A DNA stretch of 64,000 nucleotides from Mustelus asterias (lineage: Eukaryota). A program made the translations under genes and the position numbers. Numbering within the stretch: the stretch's first letter is position 1; each line of letters opens with the position of its first letter. The notes under the pieces were generated by a model. It was not told where the DNA came from. It did no database searches and worked only from the letters and a program-made list of their open reading frames with translations. Positions 1,433 through 30,634 of this stretch are shown here, piece by piece. The stretch lies in contig NW_027590219.1 of assembly GCF_964213995.1 (NCBI RefSeq), positions 62,001 to 126,000 on the forward strand, written 5' to 3'.

Positions 1433-1643
<211 letters not shown>

Positions 1644-3069: not shown

Positions 3070-3864
3070 TTGTTTAACCTGGAGAGTCACAAGGACACCC
3101 GCATCAGGGGAAAACCGTGGAAATGTGGGGACTGTGGAAAGGGATTCAATGTCCCATCAGAGCTGGAAATTCATCGACGCAGTCACACTGGAGAGAGACC
3201 GTTCAGCTGCTCAGATTGTGGGAAGGGATTCACTCAGTCATCCAGCCTGCAGAGACACCAGCGAGTTCACACCGGGGAGAGACCGTTCACCTGCTCTCAG
3301 TGTGGGAAGGGATTCACTCGGTCCTCCCACCTGCTGAGTCACAAAGTCACTCACACCAATGAGAGACCCTTTAAATGTACTGACTGTGGGAGTGGATTTA
3401 AAAGTTCTCGAGAACTGGTGTCCCACCAACGCACTCACACTGTGGAGAGACCGTTCAGCTGCTCTCACTGCTCAAAGATGTTTAGAACGACATTCCACCT
3501 GCGGAAACACCAGCGAGTTCACACTGGGGAGAGGCCGTTCACCTGCTCTGTGTGTGGGAACGGGTTCACTCAGCTATCCATCCTGCTGAGACACAATCTC
3601 ATTCACACCAATGAGAGACCCTTTAAATGTTCTGACTGTGGGAGCGGATTCAAAAGCTCAGTGGATCTGGTGTCCCACCAGCGCATTCACACTGAGGAGC
3701 GACCATTCAGCTGCTCTCACTGCACAATGAGATTTAAATGGTCATCTGCACTGCGGATACACCAGCGAGTTCACACTGGGGAGAGGCCGTTCGCCTGCTC
3801 TGTGTGTGGGAAGGGATTGACTCGGTTATCCAACCTTCAGAAACACCAACAGATTCACAAATGA
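3070..3864 (+). pseudogene. C2H2 zinc-finger gene B, 9 fingers, open frame but paralog start ATG replaced by AGG
   Basis: Nine CxxC...HxxxH fingers with TGERP-type linkers; paralogs have acc ATG GAG AAA CC whereas this has atc AGG GGA AAA CCG at 3106; exon acceptor at 2760. Confidence 0.7.
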
Positions 3865-8530: not shown

Positions 8531-9195
8531 ATTTAGAAAGGGTCAAGACCTTTCAGGTGTCCAGATCACCAACAATCTGCCCTGGTCCCCCCCATGCTGA
8601 CACTATAGTTAAGAAAGCCCACAAATGCCTCTACTTTCTCAGAAGACTGAGGAAATTTGGCATGTCAGCTATGACTCTCACCAATTTTTACAGATGCACC
8701 ACAGAAAGCATTCTTTCTGGTTGTTTCACAGCTTGATATGGCTCCTGCTCTGCCCAAGGTCACAAGGAACTACAAAAGGTCGTAGTGTAGCCCAATCCAT
8801 CATGCAAACCAACCTCCCATCCATTGACTCTGTCTACACTTCCCGCTGCCTCGGCAAAGCAGCCAGCATAATTAAGGACCCCACGCACACCGGACATTCT
8901 CTCTTCCACCTTCTTCCATTGGGAAAATGATGCAAAAGCCTGAGGTCACGTACCAACCGACTCAAGAACAGCTTCTTCCCTGCTGCCATCAGACTTTTGA
9001 ATGGACTAACCTTGCATTAAGTTGCTCTTTCTCTATACCCTAGCTATGACTGTAACACTACATTCTGCACTCTCTCATTTCTTTCTCTGTGTACGGTATG
9101 CTTTGTGCGTATAGCGCACAAGAAACAGTACTTTTCACTGTATGCTAATACATGTGACAATAATAAATCAAATCAAAACAAAATCAAATCAAAAT
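8531..9195 (+). mobile_element. Rex1/Babar-like LINE 3' fragment
   Basis: VKKAHKCLYFLRRLRKFGMS...FYRCT.ESILSGC; HSLFHLLP.GK; (aaatc)n tail after aataaa. Confidence 0.75.
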
Positions 9196-9439
9196 AAATT
9201 TAGCAATTATGCCCTCATTCCATCTTCCAGATCATTAATGTGTAACAGTGCATGTTCTGTGAATATGTGACTGAAAGCACATCTCAGCCAGCGAGACCCC
9301 GAGCAGAAGAAGATAAAGGAGATTTGCCAGTGTTGACCTGCAGGAATAACCAAAGCACAAAGAAAGGTCCCCAAGTCTGGGACTCAGAAATATTGGAACA
9401 AAAGCCTATCGGCAGGGAGCCTGATCAATTTGCCTTTTT

Positions 9440-19040: not shown

Positions 19041-20640
19041 ATGGAGAAACCGTGGAAATGTGGGGACTGTGGGAAGGGATTCAGGTTCCCATCTCGGCTT
19101 GAAGTTCATCGACACATTCATACTGGGGAGAGACCATTCACCTGTTGCGTGTGTGGGAAGGGATTCATTCAGTCATCTGACTTGCTGACACACCAGCAAG
19201 TTCATACCGGGGAGATGCCGTTCACCTGAAGCATGTGTGGGAAGGGATTCATTCGCTCATCCCACCTGCTGAGTCACAATCTCTCTCACACCAGTGAGAA
19301 ACCCTTCAACTGCTCTGACTGTGGGAGTGACTTCAAAAGTTCTTGGGAACTGGTGTCCCATCAACGTGTTCACACTGAGGAGAGGCCGTTCAGCTGTTCT
19401 CACTGCACAAAGAGATTTAAAAGGTCATCCAACCTGCGGGTACATCAGCGAGTTCACACTGGAGAGAAACCATTCACCTGCGCCATGTGTGGCAAGGGAT
19501 TCACTGCTTCATCCAGCTTCATGAAACACAAAGGTACTCACAGCAATGAGAGACCTTTTAAATGTGCTGATTGTGGGAGCGGCTTCAAAAGTACTGCAGT
19601 TCTTCGAGACCATGAGCGCATTCACACTGAGGAGAGACCGTTCAGCTGCTCACAATGTTCAGTGAGGTTTAAAAGGTCATCCACGCTGCAGAGACACCAG
19701 CGAGTTCACACTGGGGAGAAACCGTTCACCTGCTCTCAGTGTGGGAAGGGATTCACTCGGTCGTCCGCCCTGCGCACACACCAGCGAATTCACACTGGGG
19801 ACAGACCGTTAAGCTGCTCTGTGTGGGAAGGTATTAACTCGGTTATCCAGCTTGCTGAAACCCAAAGTCACTCACACCAAGTAGAGACCCATTCAATGCT
19901 TTGAATGGGGGAGTGACTGTGTACAGTTCTGGTCACCCGATTATAGAAAAGATATTATTAAACTAGAAAGAGTGCAGAAAAGATTTACTAGGATACTGGG
20001 ACTGGATGGATTGAGTTATAAGGAGAGGCTGGATAGACTGGGACTTTTTTCTCTGGAGCGTAGAAGGCTGAGGGGTGATCTTATAGAGGTCTAGAAAATA
20101 ATGAGGGACATTGATAAGGTAGATCGTCAATATCAAGGTAGGGGAGTCTAAAACTAGAGGGCATAGGTTTAAGGTGAGAGGGGAGAGATACAAAAGGGTC
20201 CAGTGGGGCAACGTTTTCACACAGAGGGTGGTGAGTGTCTGGAACAAGATGCCAGAGGTAGTAGTAGAGGCGGGTACAATTTTGTCTTTTAAAAAGCATT
20301 TAGACAGTTACATGGGTACGATGGGTATAAATGCGGGCAATTGGGACTAGCTTAGGGCTTTTAAAAAAAAGGGGCTGCATGGACAGGTTGGGCCAAAGGA
20401 CCTGTTTCCATGCTGGAAAGCTCTATGACTTCACAAGGTCTGCAGAACTGATGTCCCACCAGTGCAGTCTCACAGAGGAGAGACTGTTCAGCTGTTCTCA
20501 CTGCACAGAGGTTTTAAAGCTCATCAAACCTGTGGATTCACCAGTGAGTCCACACTGGGGAGAGACCATTCACCTGCTTTGTGTGGGGAAGGATTCACTC
20601 AGTTATCCACTCTGCTGACACCCCAGCGAGTTCACATCTT
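19041..20640 (+). pseudogene. C2H2 zinc-finger pseudogene D
   Basis: MEKPWKC start; in-frame TGA at 19227-19229 at a finger Cys position; terminal frameshift; CR1 insertion ~19917-20430; decayed fingers resume to ~20640. Confidence 0.8.
19917..20430 (+). mobile_element. CR1 3' fragment inserted in ZNF D
   Basis: [22 protein letters not shown]; CR1 tail. Confidence 0.8.
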
Positions 20641-21476
20641 TCCTAAAGTGTGGGGCCCATATATAGGGTTCCATTTCAGAGGCATAGAATTGAAAAGCAG
20701 GGAGGTTATGGCCAACTTGTTTAGAACCAGGGTTAGAGTAAACTGGGAGCCCTGTCAAAATTAGTGATCTGCATTTAGAAGAAGGAAAGAGAGGGACTGG
20801 AGATGGAGCAACGTAGATTGACAAGAATAATCCCAGAGCTGAGAGCTTTTAACCCTCAGGAAAGTCTGAGGCTGCTTTTCCCTCGAAAAGAGAAGTCTGA
20901 TGGGTGACTGAAATGTAATGGAGGACATGCCCTTGTTGACATCAAAGGTGATGAAGTGGAGATGGTTCGAGAGCTTCAAGTTTCGAGGTGTTCAGATCAT
21001 CAACAACCTGTCCTGGTCCCCCCATGCCCGGGTGGGGGAGATGGCCTGGGTAAGGTGCTCTGTCAGAGAGTCAGTGCAGGCTCAGTGGCCTCTTCTGCAC
21101 TGTATGAGTGTGGAAGAGAGGAGACAGACATTTGGGGATTGCAAGCTGATCTGTGGGTCAAATGGGAAAAAAGGTTGTGAGTTCTCTGGTTCAGCCCCAG
21201 GCACTGACGAGGAGAAGGATGGAGTCATTGGCTAGGGGACAGCGTCTGTGTCTGACACAGAATATAAAAGCTTCACTCTTCCCAGTGTTTGATCTGAGAT
21301 TTCTGTTACTCAGGAAATATGTCAGACGCTCAATGTGAGAATTCAGAGTCAGTGGAGAGGGTCAGGAGAAGTGATGTTGAGGGAGAGCTGCCTGCCAAAC
21401 CCACTTCACCGATGGAGATTCTGATCACTGCTCTGAACACCTCCTTCTTTGGCTCGGTAAACTCAGTTCTATCTGA

Positions 21477-22691
21477 TTTAAAAAAAATACTTTTCCAATT
21501 CAATCAAATCAAATCCAATTCAGAGTCTCAACAAGTTGAGACATTTCAGATCCAGGCTGACATAAGAACATAAGAAATAGGAGCAGGAGTAGGCCATCTA
21601 GCCCCTCGAGCCTGCCCCGCCATTCAATAAGATCATGGCTGATCTGACGTGGATCAGTACCACTTACCCGCCTGATCCCCATAACCCTTAATTCCCTTAC
21701 CGATCAGGAATCCATCCATCCGCGCTTTAAACATATTCAGCGAGGTAGCCTCCACCACCTCAGTGGGCAGAGAATTCCAGAGATTCACCACCCTCTGGGA
21801 GAAGAAGTTCCTCCTCAACTCTGTCTTAAACCGACCCCCCTTTATTTTGAGGCTGTGTCCTCTAGTTTTAACTTCCTTACTAAGTGGAAAGAATCTCTCC
21901 GCCTCCACCCTATCCAGCCCCCGCATTATCTTATGAGTCTCCATAAGATCCCCCCTCATCCTTCTAAACTCCAACGAGTACAAACCCAATCTCCTCAGCC
22001 TCTCCTCATAATCCAAACCCCTCATCTCCGGTATCAACCTGGTGAACCTTCTATGCACTCCCTCCAATGCCAATATATCCTTCCTCATATAAGGGGACCA
22101 ATACTGCACACAGTATTCCAGCTGCGGCCTCACCAATGCCCTGTACAGGTGCATCAAGACATCCCTGCTTTTATATTCTATCTCCCTCGCAATATAGGCC
22201 AACATCCCATTTGCCTTCTTGATCACCTGTTGTACCTGCAGACTGGGCTTTTGCGTCTCATGCACAAGGACCCCCAGGTCCCTTTGCACGGTAGCATGTT
22301 TTAATTTGTTTCCATTGAGATAGTAATCCCATTTGTTATTATTTCCTCCAAAGTGTATAACCTCGCATTTATCAACGTTATACTCCATTTGCCATATCCT
22401 CGCCCACTCACTCAGCCTGTTCAAATCTCTGACAAGACAGGGCAGGCGACCAAACCACCCTGTCCTGGGCCTGATCTACATGAGCCAAGCTGATTGGAGA
22501 AGGGGGAGGTTCCTCCTCCAAGACTTGAGCTCATTTGCATCCCAGCCAAAAGGCCGAGATGCCGCTTTAAAAAATTGCTTCATATGAAACATATGAAGCT
22601 CAGTGTAACCTAATGACCTCAACCAAGCGCGGCCGACCATGGGCTGCCGACCATAGTACACTTGATCTTAGCCAAAAGGCCGAGAAGCGAT
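21477..22691 (-). mobile_element. U2 snRNA-headed SINE-like element, copy 2 (full length, split by CR1)
   Basis: 22691-22653 = U2 nt 1-39 (38/39); body 22652-22429 and 21562-21477 colinear with copy 3; flanking direct repeat TCTATCTGA at 21468-21476 and 22694-22702. Confidence 0.9.
21563..22428 (-). mobile_element. CR1 3' fragment nested in U2-headed element
   Basis: ORF 21654-22424 RT C-terminus; CTGACA duplicated at 21557-21562 and 22429-22434. Confidence 0.9.
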
Positions 22692-22888
22692 CATCTATCT
22701 GACGTTGCACACACACGTGATATCCCTCGGGAGATTTTGTTTCTTTAACTCTATTGTTGAGGGTTTTATGTGGATGGTTCCGGTGTGGGAGGGTGGATTT
22801 TATTGTTCCCGCCCACTGAATACCTCATCAGAACCGGGAACTGAAAGTGAAAGTGAGGAGCTAAGATTCCCGCCGGCTCTAATATAGA

Positions 22889-26274: not shown

Positions 26275-29200
26275 CTAAGTCATTCGCAGATTTCATCCGG
26301 CCTCGGCATTCTGCTACGGGGGGGCAACTTCACCGTCTCCTAAGTTAAGGAGGTGGTGGGAGGACGCCTCCTCGTAGCAGACGTCACGTACAAAAACTGC
26401 CCTCTCAGGCTGATTAATGTGTATGCCCCTGCCGTCAAGACCGAGCGGCTGGCACTTTTTGAACAGCTGCCACTGCTACTCACCACCTCCAGGCCAATCA
26501 TACTGGGTGGGGACTTTAACTGTATCATTGACAAGGCCGGCCGATCCAACAGGGCCGAAAGTAAACTGGACGCTACGTCCAGAGCCCTGCTGGAAACAGT
26601 CAAAGATGCCAAGCTGCTCGACGTCTTCAGCGATCCAGCAGACGGAGGGCAGCGTAGATACACGTGGTCGCGGCCAGACGGGTCTGTCCGCTCCAGGATC
26701 GACTTCATGTTTGCATCCCGCGCTCACGGTCAGGTCCACCGACGTCAAGCCGGTGTTCTTCTCTGATCACTGCCTCCTGCTGGCAGACTGTCAGCTGGAG
26801 CAAAACCAGAAAGTGGGCAGGGGGTCCTGGAAGCTTAATGTAGAACTGTTGACCCCAGAGAACCTCGAGGAACTCAAGAGGGTTTACCACGGTTGGAGAA
26901 CCGTGAAACCCTTCTTTGAGTCTCCATCGCTCTGGTGGGAAACCATCAAGGGCAACATCAAGAGGTTCTTTATCCGAAAAGGGGTTTAGAAGGCCAGGGA
27001 GAGACGGGGGGAAATGTCCCGACTCCAGAAAAGCATGCAGGAGCTACTCCAACTGCAGTCGATGGGGGTTGATGTCAAGGAGGACCTCCGGGAGGTGAAG
27101 AGCCAGCAAGCCTCGCTCTTTGCCTCAGAGGCCTCCAAGGTTATCTTCCGGTCCAGGGTCCGCTCCGTGGAGCAGGACGAAACGTGCTCGCGCTTCTTCT
27201 TCCAGAAGGTGCACAGAGAAACCTCTGTGATCACAAGCCTGAAGGAAGAAGATGGCTCTGTAGGGTCATCGCAGTCTGACATCCTGAGGATTTGCAAATC
27301 CTTCTATGCCGGACTGAATGACCTGAAGCCAACAGACAGCACGGCCTCCCAGTCTTTCCTGTCGTCTATCACACAAGTCTTGGACGACGGCGAGCGGGAG
27401 AGCCTGGACAGACCGGTAGCTCTGGATGAGCTGACAAAGGCAGTCGAGTCCCTTCAGAAGGGTAAAACTCCCGGTAGCGACGGCTTACCGGCTGCGCTTT
27501 ACTCGGCATTGTGGGACTTGACGGGCCCGGACCTCCTGGAAGTATACGAGAGTATGCTTCTGGAAGGCAGCATGTCAGAATCCATGAGGAAAGGCATCAT
27601 TACCCTCATCTACAAGCAGAAGGGGGAAAGGGAAGAAATTAGAAATTGGAGACCTATTTCACTATTGAATGTGGATTACAAGATTCTGGCCAAGGTCATC
27701 ACCAACCGGGTCAAGTCTGCTCTGGGGTCAGTGATCCATCCTGATCAAACCTGTGCTGTACCCGGCAGGAAGATCTCTGATAGCCTCGCGCTACTCAGGG
27801 ATACGATCGCCTACGTGCAGGACAGGCAGGTGGACACCTGCCTCATCAGTCTAGACCAGGAGAAGGCGTTTGACAGAATATCGCACAGCTACATGATGGA
27901 TGTGCTCTCCAAAATGGGCTTTGGGGAGGGAATCCGCATTTGGATCCAACTGCTCTACACAGACATCAGTAGCGCAGTTTCAATCAATGGGTGGGAATCA
28001 GATATGTTTCAAATCAGGTCTGGAGTCAGGCAGGGCTGCCCTCTCTCCTCCGTCCTTTTTGTGTGTTGCATTGAACCCTTTGCCGAGGCCCTCAGAAGCG
28101 ACCCAGGCATGAAAGGGGTTACAATCCCAGGCAGCGGAGGGACGCAAGTTAAAGCCTCCCTCTACATGGATGACGTGGCTGTCTTCTGCTCGGACCCCTC
28201 GTCTGTTCGCAGGCTTCTTCGAGTCTGTGAGCAGTTCGAGCTGGCCTCGGGGGCCAAAGTCAACCAGGGTAAGAGTGAGGCCATGTTCTTTGGGAACTGG
28301 CCTGACACATCCTTTGTCCCCTTCACCATTAGGGTAGACTACCTCAAGGTGCTGGGGATATGGTTCGGAGCGGCAGGGGCATGCGCCAAAAACTGGGAGG
28401 AGCGCATCGCCAAAGCCAGACAAAAATTGGGATTGTGGGAGCAACGCTCCCTCTCCATTACTGGGAAGAACCTTGTGATCCAATGCGAGGTTCTGTCCGT
28501 GTTGTTGTACGTGGCGCAGGTGTGGCCTCTCCCCAAGTCCTGCACAGCAGCAGTGACCCGGGCCATCTTCAAGTTCATCTGGAGATCAAAGATGGATCAT
28601 GTCCGGAGGGAGGCGATGCACAAATCTCCAGAGAACGGAGGGAAAAACGTTCCCAACGCCGCCCTCATCCTGATGGCCACCTTTGTGTGCGGCTGCATCA
28701 AGCTGTGTGTAGATCCTCGGTACAGCAACAGCAAGTGCCACTATTTTTTGAGGTTCTACCTGTCCCAAGTGTTGCGGAGGATGGGTCTGGCCACATTGCC
28801 GCGGAACGCTCCAAGTAGTTGGACCGTACCGCAGCACCTGTCCTTCGTGGAGAAATTCTTCCGGAAACACACCTTTGACCACATGGCTATCAAGCAGTGG
28901 TCAGCACGTAATGTCCTTGAGGCCCTGAGAGAAAAGGAGACGGCAGATCCTGTCGGATGGTTCCCTGAGCGGACTGTCAATGTCATTTGGCAGAATACCT
29001 CATCACCAGAACTCACAAACAAGCACCAAGACCTGGCTTGGCTGGTGGTGAGAAGGGCACTCCCCGTCAGATCCTTTATGCACGCCCGGGGTCTCAACCT
29101 CACCGCACGCTGCCCTCGAAGCGGCTGCGGGGCTGATGAGACGGTGGCACACCTCCTTGTGGAATGTGCCTTTGCAAAGAAGGTCTGGAACGAGATGCAG

Positions 29201-29784
29201 TGGTATTTGTCGCGGTTCGTCCCGAGCAGCTCGGTGACGCAGGACTCTGTGCTCTACGGGCTGTTTCCGGGGACGCACACCGAGACAAATATCAACTGCT
29301 GCTGGAGGGTCATCAACTCGGTGAAGGACGCGCTTTGGTCCGCCCGAAACTTGCTGATCTTCCAGCTGAAAGAATTGTCCTCGACCGAGTGTTGCAGACT
29401 GGCACATTCCAAGGTCCAGGACTACGTGCTCAGGGACGCGCTCAAGCTTGGGGCAGCCGCCGCCATGGCACAATGGGGAAAGGCCACCGTGTAAAGCGTC
29501 TCAACCGAGGCAGACCGAGGGCCAGGTAACTGCAGAATACTCTCGGCCTGCGTAACTGTGTGCCAACCTGAAAAATAACGGCACACAGTAAACTCTGACA
29601 CATGTATATAGTTTTAAGAAATGAAATGTAATGGAATGTAATGTTTTTGTAAATGAGCACGGTATTGGACTGTAAAAATGATTCTTTTTTACACTGTTTA
29701 TGACTTTTGGATCTGTAATTTTGCAATGTTTTATTGGAGAGTTTTTTTTGTGTGAATAAAGTATATTTTTGAAATAAAAAAAAA
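26275..29784 (+). mobile_element. Tx1-clade (L1 group) non-LTR retrotransposon, 5'-truncated
   Basis: APE endonuclease (LINVYAP, GGDFN, SRIDF, SDH) with frameshift ~26725 and TAG 26987; RT in ORF 27014-29494 (WRPISLLN, LDQEKAFD, YMDD) and C-terminal CPRSGC..E...H...C; 3'UTR with AATAAA and A tail. Confidence 0.9.
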
Positions 29785-29823
29785 CCTGTTGGACTTTAAC
29801 CTGGTGTTGTGAGACTTCTTACT
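29785..29823 (+). repeat. Penelope-type terminal repeat fragment at the Tx1 3' junction
   Basis: cctgttggactttaacctggtgttgtgagacttcttact matches 38809-38848 and the reverse complement of 38682-38716. Confidence 0.7.
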
Positions 29824-29964
29824 ATTGCTCTGATCCCAGGTCAGTGATTCTGATCTTATATTGTAAAGTATATTTCAACCCTTGTGCAATTTCCGTTTCC
29901 CAGCTCTGTGTGACTATTGTCTTCCTCTGTCTCCTAACCCGCTTTGTATCCGCTGTATATTTTC

Positions 29965-30283
29965 TTTTTTTTAATACTTTTCCAATTCAATCAAATCAAA
30001 TCCAATTCAGAGTCTCAACAAGTTGAGACATTTCAGATCCAGGCTGACAAGACAGGACGGGAGACCAAAACCCCCCTGTCCTGGGCCTGATCTACATGAG
30101 TCAAGCTGATTGGAGAAGGGGGAGGTTCCTCCTCCAAGACTTGAGCTCATTTGCATCTTAGCCAAAAGGCCGAGATGCCGCTTTTAAAAATTGCTTCATA
30201 TGAAACATATGAAGCCTCAGCGTAACCTAATGACCTCAACCAAGTGCAGGCGATCCATACTACACTTGATCTTAGCCAAAGGC
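29965..30283 (-). mobile_element. U2 snRNA-headed SINE-like element, copy 3 (uninterrupted, lacks U2 nt 1-11)
   Basis: 30283-30257 = U2 nt 12-39 with a 1-nt deletion; internal perfect U2 nt 7-27 at 30175-30155; ends GGAAAAGTATT plus A8 tail. Confidence 0.9.
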
Positions 30284-30285
30284 AG

Positions 30286-30595
30286 ACGTGAGTAACGGAG
30301 ACTCAGTATCCCAGTCAGAACCAGGAGTTGAAGCAGCAGAGGGTGAAGATTCAGCAATACCCTGCAGTTACTCGGTACCGAGTTCAGCTGTACAACATTA
30401 CCTGTTCTAGTATCGCCAGTATACACACCGAGCTCCTCGGTATCTGCTCAGAGCCGATAGTTATGGGTTTAACGAGACGGCTCCCGGCTTTGAACATTTC
30501 AGCGGGAACCTCAACCAGAAACAAAGCACTTTTCACTTGTCAATGAAAGATTTGAAGATGACTGACAGCGCCGTGTATTACTGTGCACTGAGACC
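30286..30595 (+). pseudogene. T-cell receptor alpha/delta-type V segment pseudogene
   Basis: GDSVSQSEPGVEAAEGEDSAIPCSYSVPSSAVQHYLF*YRQYTHRAPRYLLR...FSGNLNQKQSTFHLSMKDLKMTDSAVYYCALR; both canonical Cys present; invariant Trp is TAG at 30408-30410; phase-1 acceptor cag|ac. Confidence 0.9.
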
Positions 30596-30634
30596 CACAG
30601 TGCATGAGCCTCCCATGGGCCTCATACAAAAACT
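30596..30634 (+). other. 23-bp-spacer recombination signal sequence (RSS)
   Basis: CACAGTG (30596-30602) + 23 nt + ACAAAAACT (30626-30634) directly after YYCALR. Confidence 0.95.

What the first reader, a model, noticed from the sequence alone, without database searches (positions are those of the whole stretch)
21468..22702. A U2-snRNA-headed SINE family (SINEU-like) in a probable shark genome: three copies in 30 kb
Seen: three dispersed copies (1527-1643 +, 21477-22691 -, 29965-30283 -) share the U2 head (nt 1-39; copy 3 from nt 12) joined at the same point to the same non-U2 body, ~290 nt in the two long copies, ending in an A/T-rich tail. Copy 2 is flanked by a 9-bp direct repeat (TCTATCTGA) and was later split by a CR1 with CTGACA duplicated. 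Established: SINE heads normally derive from tRNA, 7SL or 5S; U1/U2-headed SINEs (SINEU) were described from crocodilians and linked to Tx1 mobilisation; Keno and Utopia retrotransposons target U2 at about this position. Inference: an independent chondrichthyan SINEU, possibly born when an element inserted into a U2 gene was read from the external U2 promoter. I do not know whether it is already in Dfam/Repbase.
Basis: partly seen in the sequence, partly recalled or inferred. Interest (0 to 1): 0.85.

Follow-up and report, generated by a model that had tools for sequence, protein, structure and literature searches.

The report
U2-headed SINE family in an elasmobranch
A short, non-coding jumping element whose first 39 letters are copied from the U2 spliceosomal RNA occurs three times in this window and in very many copies in at least three related genomes, making it a second, probably independent case of the rare snRNA-headed SINEs known so far only from crocodilians.

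Summary
Three unrelated loci carry the same composite element. It has U2 snRNA nt 1-38/39, a non-U2 body holding a second U2 piece (nt 4-33), and an A/T-rich tail.

- **Copy 2** has a perfect 9-bp target duplication and a later nested CR1-like insert.
- **Copy 3** is 29963-30288, not 29965-30283. It starts near U2 nt 3, not nt 12. A contig from another organism shows the same site empty.
- **Copy 1** is an old 5' part joined directly to a 5'-truncated CR1.

Contigs from three coded organisms pile up on the element far more deeply than on its flanks. Tandem head-to-tail copies also occur.

The element is best read as a SINEU-type non-autonomous retroposon. It is not a Pol III SINE, because it has T4-T6 runs inside and no tRNA part. 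Its A-rich ends fit mobilisation by an L1-superfamily (probably Tx1/Keno-like) LINE.

The head/body joint coincides with the published Keno/Utopia target site in U2 (nt 38|39). This favours birth by co-transcription from a U2 gene, but that is untested. The partner LINE, the promoter and a Repbase/Dfam check remain open.

This scan noted the family at least 16 times elsewhere in the same genome (unchecked first-reader notes).

The parts
22694..22702 (.). Target-site duplication of copy 2, 5' side of the element (TCTATCTGA on +)
   Evidence: the only exact match of 6 nt or more between the two flanks. It lies at the element's ends.
22653..22691 (-). Copy 2: U2 snRNA-derived head (U2 nt 1-39, one mismatch), preceded by 2 extra nt (22692-22693)
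   Evidence: Rfam U2 45.5 bits, E 3.8e-8. Sequence.
22429..22652 (-). Copy 2: body, 5' part. It holds a 13-nt local duplication after the head, a perfect palindrome, a T6 run, and two long hairpins.
   Evidence: (93.0% to copy 3 over 215 nt).
22532..22562 (-). Copy 2: internal second U2-like piece (U2 nt ~4-33), forming an extended stem-loop-I-like hairpin. The octamer ATGCAAAT overlaps its end.
21563..22428 (-). Nested CR1-like LINE 3' fragment (5'-truncated, same orientation), inserted later into copy 2. TGTCAG is duplicated at both sides, of which 4-6 nt are attributable to the target.
   Evidence: similar fragments across the window, including downstream of an RVT_1 ORF; open C-terminal frame; ends in TTCTTATG x2.
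21477..21562 (-). Copy 2: 3' part of the body and the tail (ends GTA-T8-AAA)
   Evidence: 77 of 77 nt identical to copy 3..
21468..21476 (.). Target-site duplication of copy 2, 3' side
29963..30288 (-). Copy 3: uninterrupted 326-nt element. The head runs from about U2 nt 3 with small deletions (30257-30288), the internal U2 piece is 30148-30178, and the tail is GTATT-A8-GA. It lies in a V-gene-like pseudogene.
   Evidence: Boundaries come from the empty-site contig of organism E (record 9: 29962 joined to 30289 with 7 other letters between).
1527..1643 (+). Copy 1: old 5' part of the element (head 1527-1565, body up to the first 9 nt of the internal U2 piece). It is joined directly to a 5'-truncated CR1-like LINE on the same strand (1644 to about 2368).
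   Evidence: 78.4% over 116 nt; U2 41.1 bits; no target duplication, no remainder of the element downstream.
26340..29777 (+). Context: 5'-truncated L1-superfamily (Tx1-like) LINE with an AATAAA signal and an A9 tail. It is the only poly(A)-type LINE seen in the window and is a candidate type of partner, but the link is weak.
   Evidence: (Exo_endo_phos, RVT_1, zf-RVT). Tail comparison.

Best explanation
This is a family of short (about 326-343 nt), non-coding, LINE-dependent retroposons of the SINEU type in an elasmobranch genome.

Each unit has three parts:
- the first 38-39 nt of U2 snRNA;
- a body that folds into a chain of hairpins and holds an older second U2 piece (nt 4-33);
- an A/T-rich end.

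Shown:
- The composition of the unit.
- The same U2/body joint in three copies of different age.
- Insertion with a 9-bp target duplication.
- An empty counterpart of one filled site.
- High repetition in three organisms.
- 5'-truncated copies and head-to-tail tandem copies.
- Later disruption of one copy by a CR1.

Inferred:
- RNA copies are reverse-transcribed at nicked target DNA by the enzyme of a poly(A)-type LINE of the L1 superfamily, most likely a Tx1/Keno-like one.
- The RNA is not made by RNA polymerase III, because T4-T6 runs stand inside the unit and there is no tRNA, 7SL or 5S part. It must therefore start from an outside promoter.
- The U2 part ends exactly where Keno and Utopia elements enter U2 genes (nt 38|39). 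The likeliest birth is therefore a Keno-type element, or a short derivative of one, sitting in a U2 gene and read from the U2 promoter, so that the transcript starts at U2 +1 and carries the 5' target flank along.
- The second, inner U2 piece records an earlier round of the same kind of capture.
For: - Head is U2: (best 45.5 bits, E 3.8e-8).
- Same joint and body.
- Only three loci, with unrelated flanks.
- Target duplication.
- Empty site, tandem joints with 4-18 nt between copies, and summed contig depth of about 1e5-1e6 on the element against 1e2-1e3 on the V-gene flanks in organisms A and E, with the element also covered in G.
- Variant letters that are about 40-50% in A but about 95-100% in E (places 30139, 30145; 30120 is about 2% in A against about 100% in E). 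This points to subfamilies and lineage-specific spread.
- Inner U2 piece: 28 of 31 columns identical, score 24 against a maximum of 15 in 1000 shuffles.
- T runs of 4 or more at element positions 99, 122 and 219, and no tRNA in the window.
- Strong fold: -133.6 kcal/mol, z -8.27, 0 of 100 shuffles as good.
- Keno/Utopia site at U2 nt 38|39: PMC4640811, passages.
- SINEU precedent, including repeated 5' addition of U2, poly(A) tails, inner oligo-T and U2-headed Tx1 LINEs: PMC4494074, sections 10-12 and 16-18.
- An L1/Tx1-type LINE is present in the window.
Against: - No partner LINE with the same 3' end was found. The tail's likeness to the 3' end of the in-window Tx1-like LINE scores 21, and 2 unrelated low-complexity loci among 1822 windows score as high or higher.
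- Copy 2 ends in T8-AAA rather than a plain A run.
- Copy 3 has no target duplication. The empty site has 7 letters that the filled site lacks.
- Only one clean target duplication was seen in the window.
- Copy 2's target (TCAGATAGA) is not U2 and not the L1-type TT|AAAA site, so the enzyme's specificity is unknown.
- No RNA evidence exists. The runs called 'RNA?' are guesses and are contigs.
- snRNA-type promoters normally give non-polyadenylated RNA, which sits badly with an A-tailed retroposon.
- The inner U2 piece is recognisable only to about nt 33, not 38.
- Of 6 variable paired positions, 3 keep the pair and 3 break it, so the fold is not shown to be conserved by selection.
Confidence: 0.8

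Rival explanations
1. Same kind of retroposon, but the U2 head was acquired by template switching. In this reading the LINE reverse transcriptase reached the 5' end of the body RNA and jumped onto a U2 snRNA, as proposed for the crocodilian SINEU. The match with the Keno target site is then a coincidence.
For: - Kojima's model for repeated 5' additions (PMC4494074, section 18).
- The unit holds two U2 pieces in series.
- Tandem copies separated by 4-18 odd letters look like template jumps.
- Copy 1 is a direct fusion of a SINE 5' part to a 5'-truncated CR1 on the same strand.
Against: - A jump onto U2 snRNA would be expected to start at or near its 3' end or at varied inner points. Here the U2 part stops within 1 nt of the Keno/Utopia site. 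I estimate about 3 in 188 by chance, under a uniform assumption.
- First-reader notes report U2-headed Tx1 LINEs in this genome (unchecked).
Confidence: 0.3
2. The element is mobilised by the abundant CR1-type LINEs of this genome rather than by an L1/Tx1-type LINE.
For: - CR1-like fragments are the commonest LINE pieces in the window (17 BLAST segments).
- Two of the three copies adjoin CR1 pieces on the same strand.
Against: - The element ends in A/T runs, not in the 8-nt repeat (TTCTTATG) that ends the CR1 copy here.
- No likeness between the element's tail and the CR1 3' end. The nhmmer extension into it has posterior values of only 1-5.
- In copy 2 the CR1 is a nested later insertion with its own small duplication.
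Confidence: 0.07
3. Not a mobile family. On this reading the copies are U2 pseudogenes or variant U2-like RNA genes spread by segmental duplication, or independent one-off chimeric retrocopies.
For: - The head is a near-perfect U2 5' end.
- The RNA would be strongly folded.
- An Sm-site-like AAUUUUUA between two hairpins aligns weakly to U2's Sm site.
Against: - Flanks are unrelated.
- Target duplication and empty site.
- Very high repetition in three organisms.
- 5'-truncated and tandem copies.
- Identical joint in copies that are 78-93% alike.
- The rest of U2 (nt 40-188) is absent.
Confidence: 0.03

Closest known systems
SINEU-1 of crocodilians (Kojima 2015, PMC4494074)
   Same: - Short non-coding retroposon with a short 5' U2-derived head on a non-snRNA body.
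- More than one U2 piece in series.
- A-type tail, oligo-T runs inside, no known promoter, occasional target duplications of about 10 bp, and no partner LINE with the same tail known.
   Different: - The host is an elasmobranch. The paper found none outside crocodilians (section 10).
- Body homology could not be tested because no library was available.
- No U1 pieces here.
- Here the body is a chain of strong hairpins, and the head ends at the Keno/Utopia site.
- Some copies here look young (77 of 77 nt identical tails), whereas SINEU-1 stopped moving 80-100 Ma.
Keno and Tx1-Mar LINEs (Tx1 clade), including U2-headed Tx1-11_Crp
   Same: - Keno enters U2 genes so that U2 nt 39 follows the element. 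Our head is U2 nt 1-38/39.
- Some crocodilian Tx1-Mar LINEs carry U2 heads like those of SINEU.
- Poly(A)-type ends.
   Different: - Our element has no ORF.
- It is not followed by U2 nt 39 onward.
- It lies at non-U2 sites (a random site with a TSD, and a V-gene pseudogene).
- No sequence link to a Tx1 LINE was shown.
SINEU-3 / monomeric-Alu-like deleted small-RNA retroposons
   Same: The U2 5' end (32 nt in SINEU-3) is kept as the head.
   Different: SINEU-3 is mostly U2 (a further 83 nt of U2). Here nothing beyond nt 39 of U2 is recognisable apart from a second 5' piece.
snRNA-LINE chimeric retrocopies made by template switching (U6-L1 type; as cited in PMC4494074 section 18)
   Same: An snRNA piece fused 5' to another retro-copied RNA. 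Copy 1 (element 5' part + 5'-truncated CR1) and the tandem copies have this look.
   Different: Those are one-off events with individual joints. Here one joint is shared by a whole high-copy family.
SVA and other non-autonomous retroposons that are not Pol III transcripts (as discussed in PMC4494074, section 18)
   Same: Non-coding, LINE-dependent, and dependent on outside or unconventional promoters.
   Different: SVA is about 2 kb, primate-specific, has no small-RNA head, and has L1 as a proven partner.

Membership tests
SINEU (snRNA-headed SINEs) | 5' region derived from U1 or U2 snRNA | tested here: met
   Rfam U2 is the best match at all 3 loci (45.5, 41.1 and 23.0 bits). 38 of 39 nt are conserved in copies 1 and 2 by eye against the model consensus.
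SINEU (snRNA-headed SINEs) | Short (<500 bp) non-coding repeated unit that retrotransposes as a whole | tested here: met
   Unit of 326 nt (copy 3). Same joint in 3 copies. TSD. Empty site and high repetition in 3 organisms.
SINEU (snRNA-headed SINEs) | 3' poly(A) tail | tested here: inconclusive
   Copy 3 ends A8GA. Copy 2 ends T8AAA. Loose ends in organism E show A10 runs after the tail. The ends are A/T-rich, but not a plain poly(A) in both copies.
SINEU (snRNA-headed SINEs) | Sequence homology of the body to SINEU-1/2/3 consensus sequences | not testable with these tools
SINEU (snRNA-headed SINEs) | Mobilised by Tx1-clade LINEs (shared target preference or shared heads) | tested here: inconclusive
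   An L1/Tx1-type LINE is present in the window, but its tail likeness is within the chance range. U2-headed Tx1 LINEs are only reported in unchecked notes.
Classical Pol III SINE (tRNA/7SL/5S head) | Head with an internal Pol III promoter, and no terminator inside the unit | tested here: not met
   ARAGORN finds 0 tRNA in the window. Rfam finds no tRNA, 7SL or 5S at E<=10 in the three loci. T4-T6 runs stand at element positions 99, 122 and 219.
U2 snRNA gene or full-length U2 retropseudogene | U2 nt 40-188 with the Sm site and stem-loops III/IV | tested here: not met
   Below Rfam's gathering score in all copies. Only model positions 1-39 align with high posterior.
Keno/Utopia (U2-gene-specific LINEs) | Encodes RT and endonuclease, and is inserted in a U2 gene with U2 nt 39 onward as its 3' flank | tested here: not met
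   No ORF in the unit. The 3' flanks are a TSD plus unique DNA (copy 2) and a V-gene pseudogene (copy 3). Only the 5' joint position matches.

The most novel reading that the evidence does not exclude
The family is the non-autonomous arm of a U2-gene-parasitic Tx1/Keno system in elasmobranchs. In this reading:
- Master copies sit at nt 38|39 of genuine U2 genes.
- They are read by RNA polymerase II from the external snRNA promoter, starting at U2 +1.
- The resulting RNA is U2-capped and hairpin-rich, and is then copied to thousands of non-U2 sites.

That would be the first retroposon class shown to borrow an snRNA gene's outside promoter. It would answer the open question of how SINEU elements are transcribed.
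Probability: 0.3. Interest if true: 0.78.

Novelty: new member of a known kind. Interest (0 to 1): 0.58.

Why it matters
SINE heads almost always come from tRNA, 7SL or 5S RNA, because those carry their own Pol III promoter. snRNA-headed SINEs break that rule. They were described from one reptile order only, where all but one family are long dead and where neither the promoter nor a partner with a matching tail could be found.

This family offers several things the crocodilian one does not:
- It is abundant and occurs in a distant vertebrate class.
- It has young-looking copies and lineage-specific variants.
- Its head ends exactly at the Keno/Utopia target site in U2.

That gives a second, better-preserved system in which the birth and transcription of such elements can be tested. 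Possible tests are a search for master copies in U2 arrays, CAGE or cap analysis, and a retrotransposition assay with the Tx1 enzyme.

There is also a practical point. Annotation pipelines will label these copies 'snRNA/U2', which inflates U2 gene counts in shark genomes.

Tried and rejected
1. **Partner LINE through the tail.**
   - The last 79 nt of copy 2 align colinearly with the last 70 nt of the in-window Tx1-like LINE's 3' UTR. The score is 21, against shuffles of 12.5 +/- 2.1, with 0 of 300 shuffles as high.
   - A scan of 1822 windows of 283 nt then gave two unrelated low-complexity loci at 21-23 (9146-9208, and 58.2 kb for copy 3's tail). I rate the link as weak.
3. **Two metagenome scans** with exact stretches of the element found 0 loci.
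4. **Covariation.** I mapped 11 family-level variant letters onto the predicted fold. Six lie in pairs; 3 keep the pair and 3 break it. This gives no support for selection on the structure.
5. **Copy 1.** I searched for a target duplication around the head-plus-CR1 unit and for the rest of the element after the CR1 end (about 2368). Neither was found. Whether it is a template-switch chimera or a nested insertion followed by a deletion stays open.
6. **nhmmer extension.** nhmmer extended the tail hit into the CR1 3' end, but the posterior values are 1-5, so I rejected it as spurious.
7. **Joints to the 46-nt repeat piece.** Joints link the 46-nt hyper-abundant piece (ending 29821-29823) to the element's tail. 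I did not read these as site preference, because the letters between are 'not known' and both sequences are abundant.
8. **Depth dip over the head (30258-30289).** I did not read this as a scarcity of full-length copies, because the tool drops human-like contigs.
9. **Other RNA families and ribozymes.** Nothing else in Rfam matched convincingly at E<=10. SNORD94 on the other strand (E 0.012-0.13) was taken as chance.
10. **Literature.**
    - 'SINEU' + 'snRNA' (whole word): 7 papers, none on fishes.
    - 'SINE' + 'U2 snRNA' + 'shark': 5 papers, none relevant by title or abstract.
    - Six loose terms, at least 1 required: 162 papers, of which I looked at the 40 listed and found none relevant.
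    - 'Tx1' + 'shark' + 'SINEs': 4 papers, none on this by title or abstract.
    - ('SINEU' as a word start) returned SINEUP papers only.
    - Repbase Reports, Dfam and SINEBase are not covered by these searches.
    - Supplementary figures of PMC4494074 and PMC4640811, which show the U2 joints of SINEU, Tx1 and Utopia, were not seen and may bear on the joint position.
Full report
**What is there**

BLASTN of copy 3 against the whole window and nhmmer find it at three loci only:
- 1527-1643 (+)
- 22691-22429 plus 21562-21477 (-)
- 30288-29963 (-)

The window has no N and is 45% G+C. Identities to copy 3 are:
- copy 2, 5' part: 93.0% over 215 nt
- copy 2, tail: 77 of 77 nt
- copy 1: 78.4% over 116 nt

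**The head is U2**

Rfam at gathering thresholds lists nothing in the window. With E-value thresholds, the U2 model is the best match at each locus:

| Copy | Bits | E-value |
|---|---|---|
| 2 | 45.5 | 3.8e-8 |
| 1 | 41.1 | 3.2e-7 |
| 3 | 23.0 | 0.012 |

The gathering score is 46. Only model positions 1-39 align with high posterior, and the rest of U2 is absent. In all three copies the U2 part ends after ...GTAGTAT and the same non-U2 sequence follows (alignment A1).

**Anatomy of the unit**

- After the head comes a stretch that pairs back onto U2 nt 25-36.
- Next is a perfect 9-bp palindrome with a 3-nt loop.
- Next is a T5-T6 run.
- Next is a second U2 piece. U2 nt 4-33 align to element positions 111-141 with 28 of 31 columns identical. 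The score is 24, against shuffles of 7.1 +/- 1.4 and a maximum of 15 in 1000.
- That second piece forms a lengthened stem-loop-I-like hairpin.
- Then come two long hairpins, a 7-bp hairpin, and a tail of GATTT/GATTG-like repeats ending GTATT plus an A or T run.
- As RNA, copy 3 folds to -133.6 kcal/mol (z -8.27; 0 of 100 shuffles as good).
- T runs of 4 or more stand at element positions 99, 122 and 219.
- An octamer ATGCAAAT (position 133) and a CCAAT (position 176) are present in both long copies. I treat these two motifs as an unexplained detail.

**It moved as a unit**

*Copy 2*
- It is flanked by TCTATCTGA at 21468 and 22694. This is the only match of 6 nt or more in a 56 x 56 comparison of its flanks.
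- Two extra letters lie between the duplication and U2 nt 1.
- It was later split by an 866-bp 3' fragment of a CR1-like LINE on the same strand.
- That fragment has an open C-terminal frame and ends in TTCTTATG twice, with TGTCAG on both sides.

*Copy 3*
- One 268-nt contig of organism E joins 29962 directly to 30289 with 7 other letters (CCAGAGA) in between (record 9).
- This gives an empty counterpart of the site and fixes the insertion at 29963-30288 (326 nt).
- The filled site has no target duplication and lacks those 7 letters.
- This is either a small target deletion or a difference between paralogues. The host is a member of a V-gene family (V-set, E 4e-7) with an in-frame stop and a recombination signal.

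*All copies*
- Six 300-nt flanks compared in 15 pairs share nothing at E<=0.01.

**It is a large family in several organisms**

I laid Logan contigs of four runs on 29650-30600 at 85% likeness.
- The summed contig depth over the element is about 1e5-1.2e6 in organisms A and E, against 2e2-5e3 over the V-gene flanks.
- The tool warns that this figure is not a copy number.
- Organism G (a run guessed to be RNA) covers the element but not the V-gene flanks.
- Organism D holds only a 46-nt piece of another repeat.
- Variant letters differ between organisms. Place 30120 is about 2% G>C in A and about 100% in E. Places 30139 and 30145 are about 40-50% variant in A and about 95-100% in E.
- These differences point to subfamilies and lineage-specific spread.
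- Copy 2 carries the majority letters in the fifth hairpin, and copy 3 a minority form.
- At least five contigs of organism A show one copy's tail followed after 4-18 odd letters by a second, 5'-truncated copy. The second copy starts at element positions of about 9, 40 or 114 (table 5c).
- The depth dip over the head cannot be interpreted, because human-like contigs are dropped by the tool.

**Copy 1**

The head and body up to position 114 are joined directly to a 5'-truncated CR1-like ORF on the same strand.
- The CR1 ends near 2368.
- No remainder of the element and no target duplication follows.
- It is either a template-switch chimera or a nested insertion followed by a deletion. I cannot tell which.

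**Source organism**

A 5'-truncated LINE lies at 26340-29777 (+).
- Its domains are Exo_endo_phos, RVT_1 and zf-RVT.
- It matches human L1 ORF2p at E 2e-66.
- One hit, at 40% identity, is named 'transposon TX1'.
- Its nearest relatives, at 67-71% identity, are proteins of Leucoraja erinacea and Rhincodon typus.
- This fits an elasmobranch. The runs' organisms are coded, so I cannot name the species.

**How it most likely works**

- The A/T-rich ends, the target duplication, the 5' truncation and the tandem arrangement fit target-primed reverse transcription by a poly(A)-type LINE.
- CR1, whose copy here ends in an 8-nt repeat, is an unlikely partner.
- RNA polymerase III is unlikely to make a full-length RNA, because three T runs of 4 or more stand inside the unit and no tRNA, 7SL or 5S part is present. 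The same argument was made for the crocodilian SINEU (PMC4494074, section 18).

*The key clue*
- The Utopia paper states that the U2 sequence downstream of Utopia insertions starts at nt 39, and that Keno's 3' flank is the same (PMC4640811, passages).
- Our head is U2 nt 1-38/39.
- A Keno-type element in a U2 gene, read from the U2 promoter, would give exactly such an RNA.
- Some crocodilian Tx1-Mar LINEs, sisters of Keno, also carry U2 heads (PMC4494074, section 16).
- Unchecked first-reader notes report U2-headed Tx1 LINEs in this same genome.
- I could not test this step.

*Rival origin and remaining weaknesses*
- The rival origin is a template switch onto U2 snRNA, which is Kojima's model. 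It is supported by the serial U2 pieces, the tandem copies and copy 1.
- The link between the element's tail and the in-window Tx1-like LINE's 3' end is weak.

**Comparison with what is known**

The closest described family is SINEU-1. I read sections 10-12 and 16-18 of PMC4494074, plus passages.
- Shared features: a short U2 head, serial U2 additions, an A tail, inner oligo-T, no promoter, and no partner with the same tail.
- That paper found no SINEU outside crocodilians (section 10).
- Later papers that I saw only as passages repeat this (PMC5786205 and PMC8010984).
- My four targeted searches found nothing on a shark or ray U2-headed SINE.
- Repbase, Dfam and SINEBase could not be queried, so an existing library entry cannot be excluded.

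**Verdict**

This is a new member of the SINEU kind in a second vertebrate class, with a joint that points to its origin. This scan noted the family on other pieces of the same genome at least 16 times (unchecked).

Noticed in passing
window 29778-29823: A 46-nt piece (cctgttggactttaacc...cttcttact) directly after the LINE's A tail has by far the highest summed contig depth of the stretch (about 1.5e7 in organism A). It is the only part held by organism D. Loose ends show that it is an inner part of a much longer, hyper-abundant repeat.
   Followed up: partly
window 30290-30634: A V-set gene segment (Pfam V-set, E 4e-7) ends in ...DSAVYYCALRP. It is followed by a heptamer (cacagtg, 30596-30602), a 23-nt spacer and a nonamer (acaaaaact, 30626-30634). 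It carries an in-frame TAG at 30408-30410. This is a TCR/Ig V pseudogene, with SINE copy 3 sitting just upstream at what looks like the leader/intron border.
   Followed up: partly
window 26340-29777 (+): A 5'-truncated L1-superfamily (Tx1-like) LINE with an intact 826-aa RT/zf-RVT frame, a frameshifted endonuclease part, an AATAAA signal and an A9 tail. Its nearest relatives are in little skate and whale shark at 67-71% identity.
   Followed up: partly
window 30129-30156 and 22510-22540 (-): Both long SINE copies hold an exact octamer ATGCAAAT (partly made of the inner U2 piece) and, 43 nt further on, a CCAATCAG. These are promoter-like motifs inside an element whose promoter is unknown. They may be chance.
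   Followed up: no
window 29821-29823 joined to 29963-30000 in other contigs: Several contigs of organisms A and E contain the 46-nt repeat piece and the SINE tail close together in the same relative orientation as here (table 5). This could be chance nesting of two abundant repeats or a preferred insertion site.
   Followed up: no
window 3070-3864 (+) and 19233-19904 (+): Two open frames made of tandem C2H2 zinc fingers (Pfam zf-C2H2, E 3e-49 and 3.5e-36). They are probably exons of KRAB-less ZNF-type genes or pseudogenes.
   Followed up: no
window 22600-22652 (-): Copy 2 has a 13-nt local duplication (ATGGTCGGC-type) just after the U2 head that copies 1 and 3 lack. It lengthens the first hairpin.
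   Followed up: no
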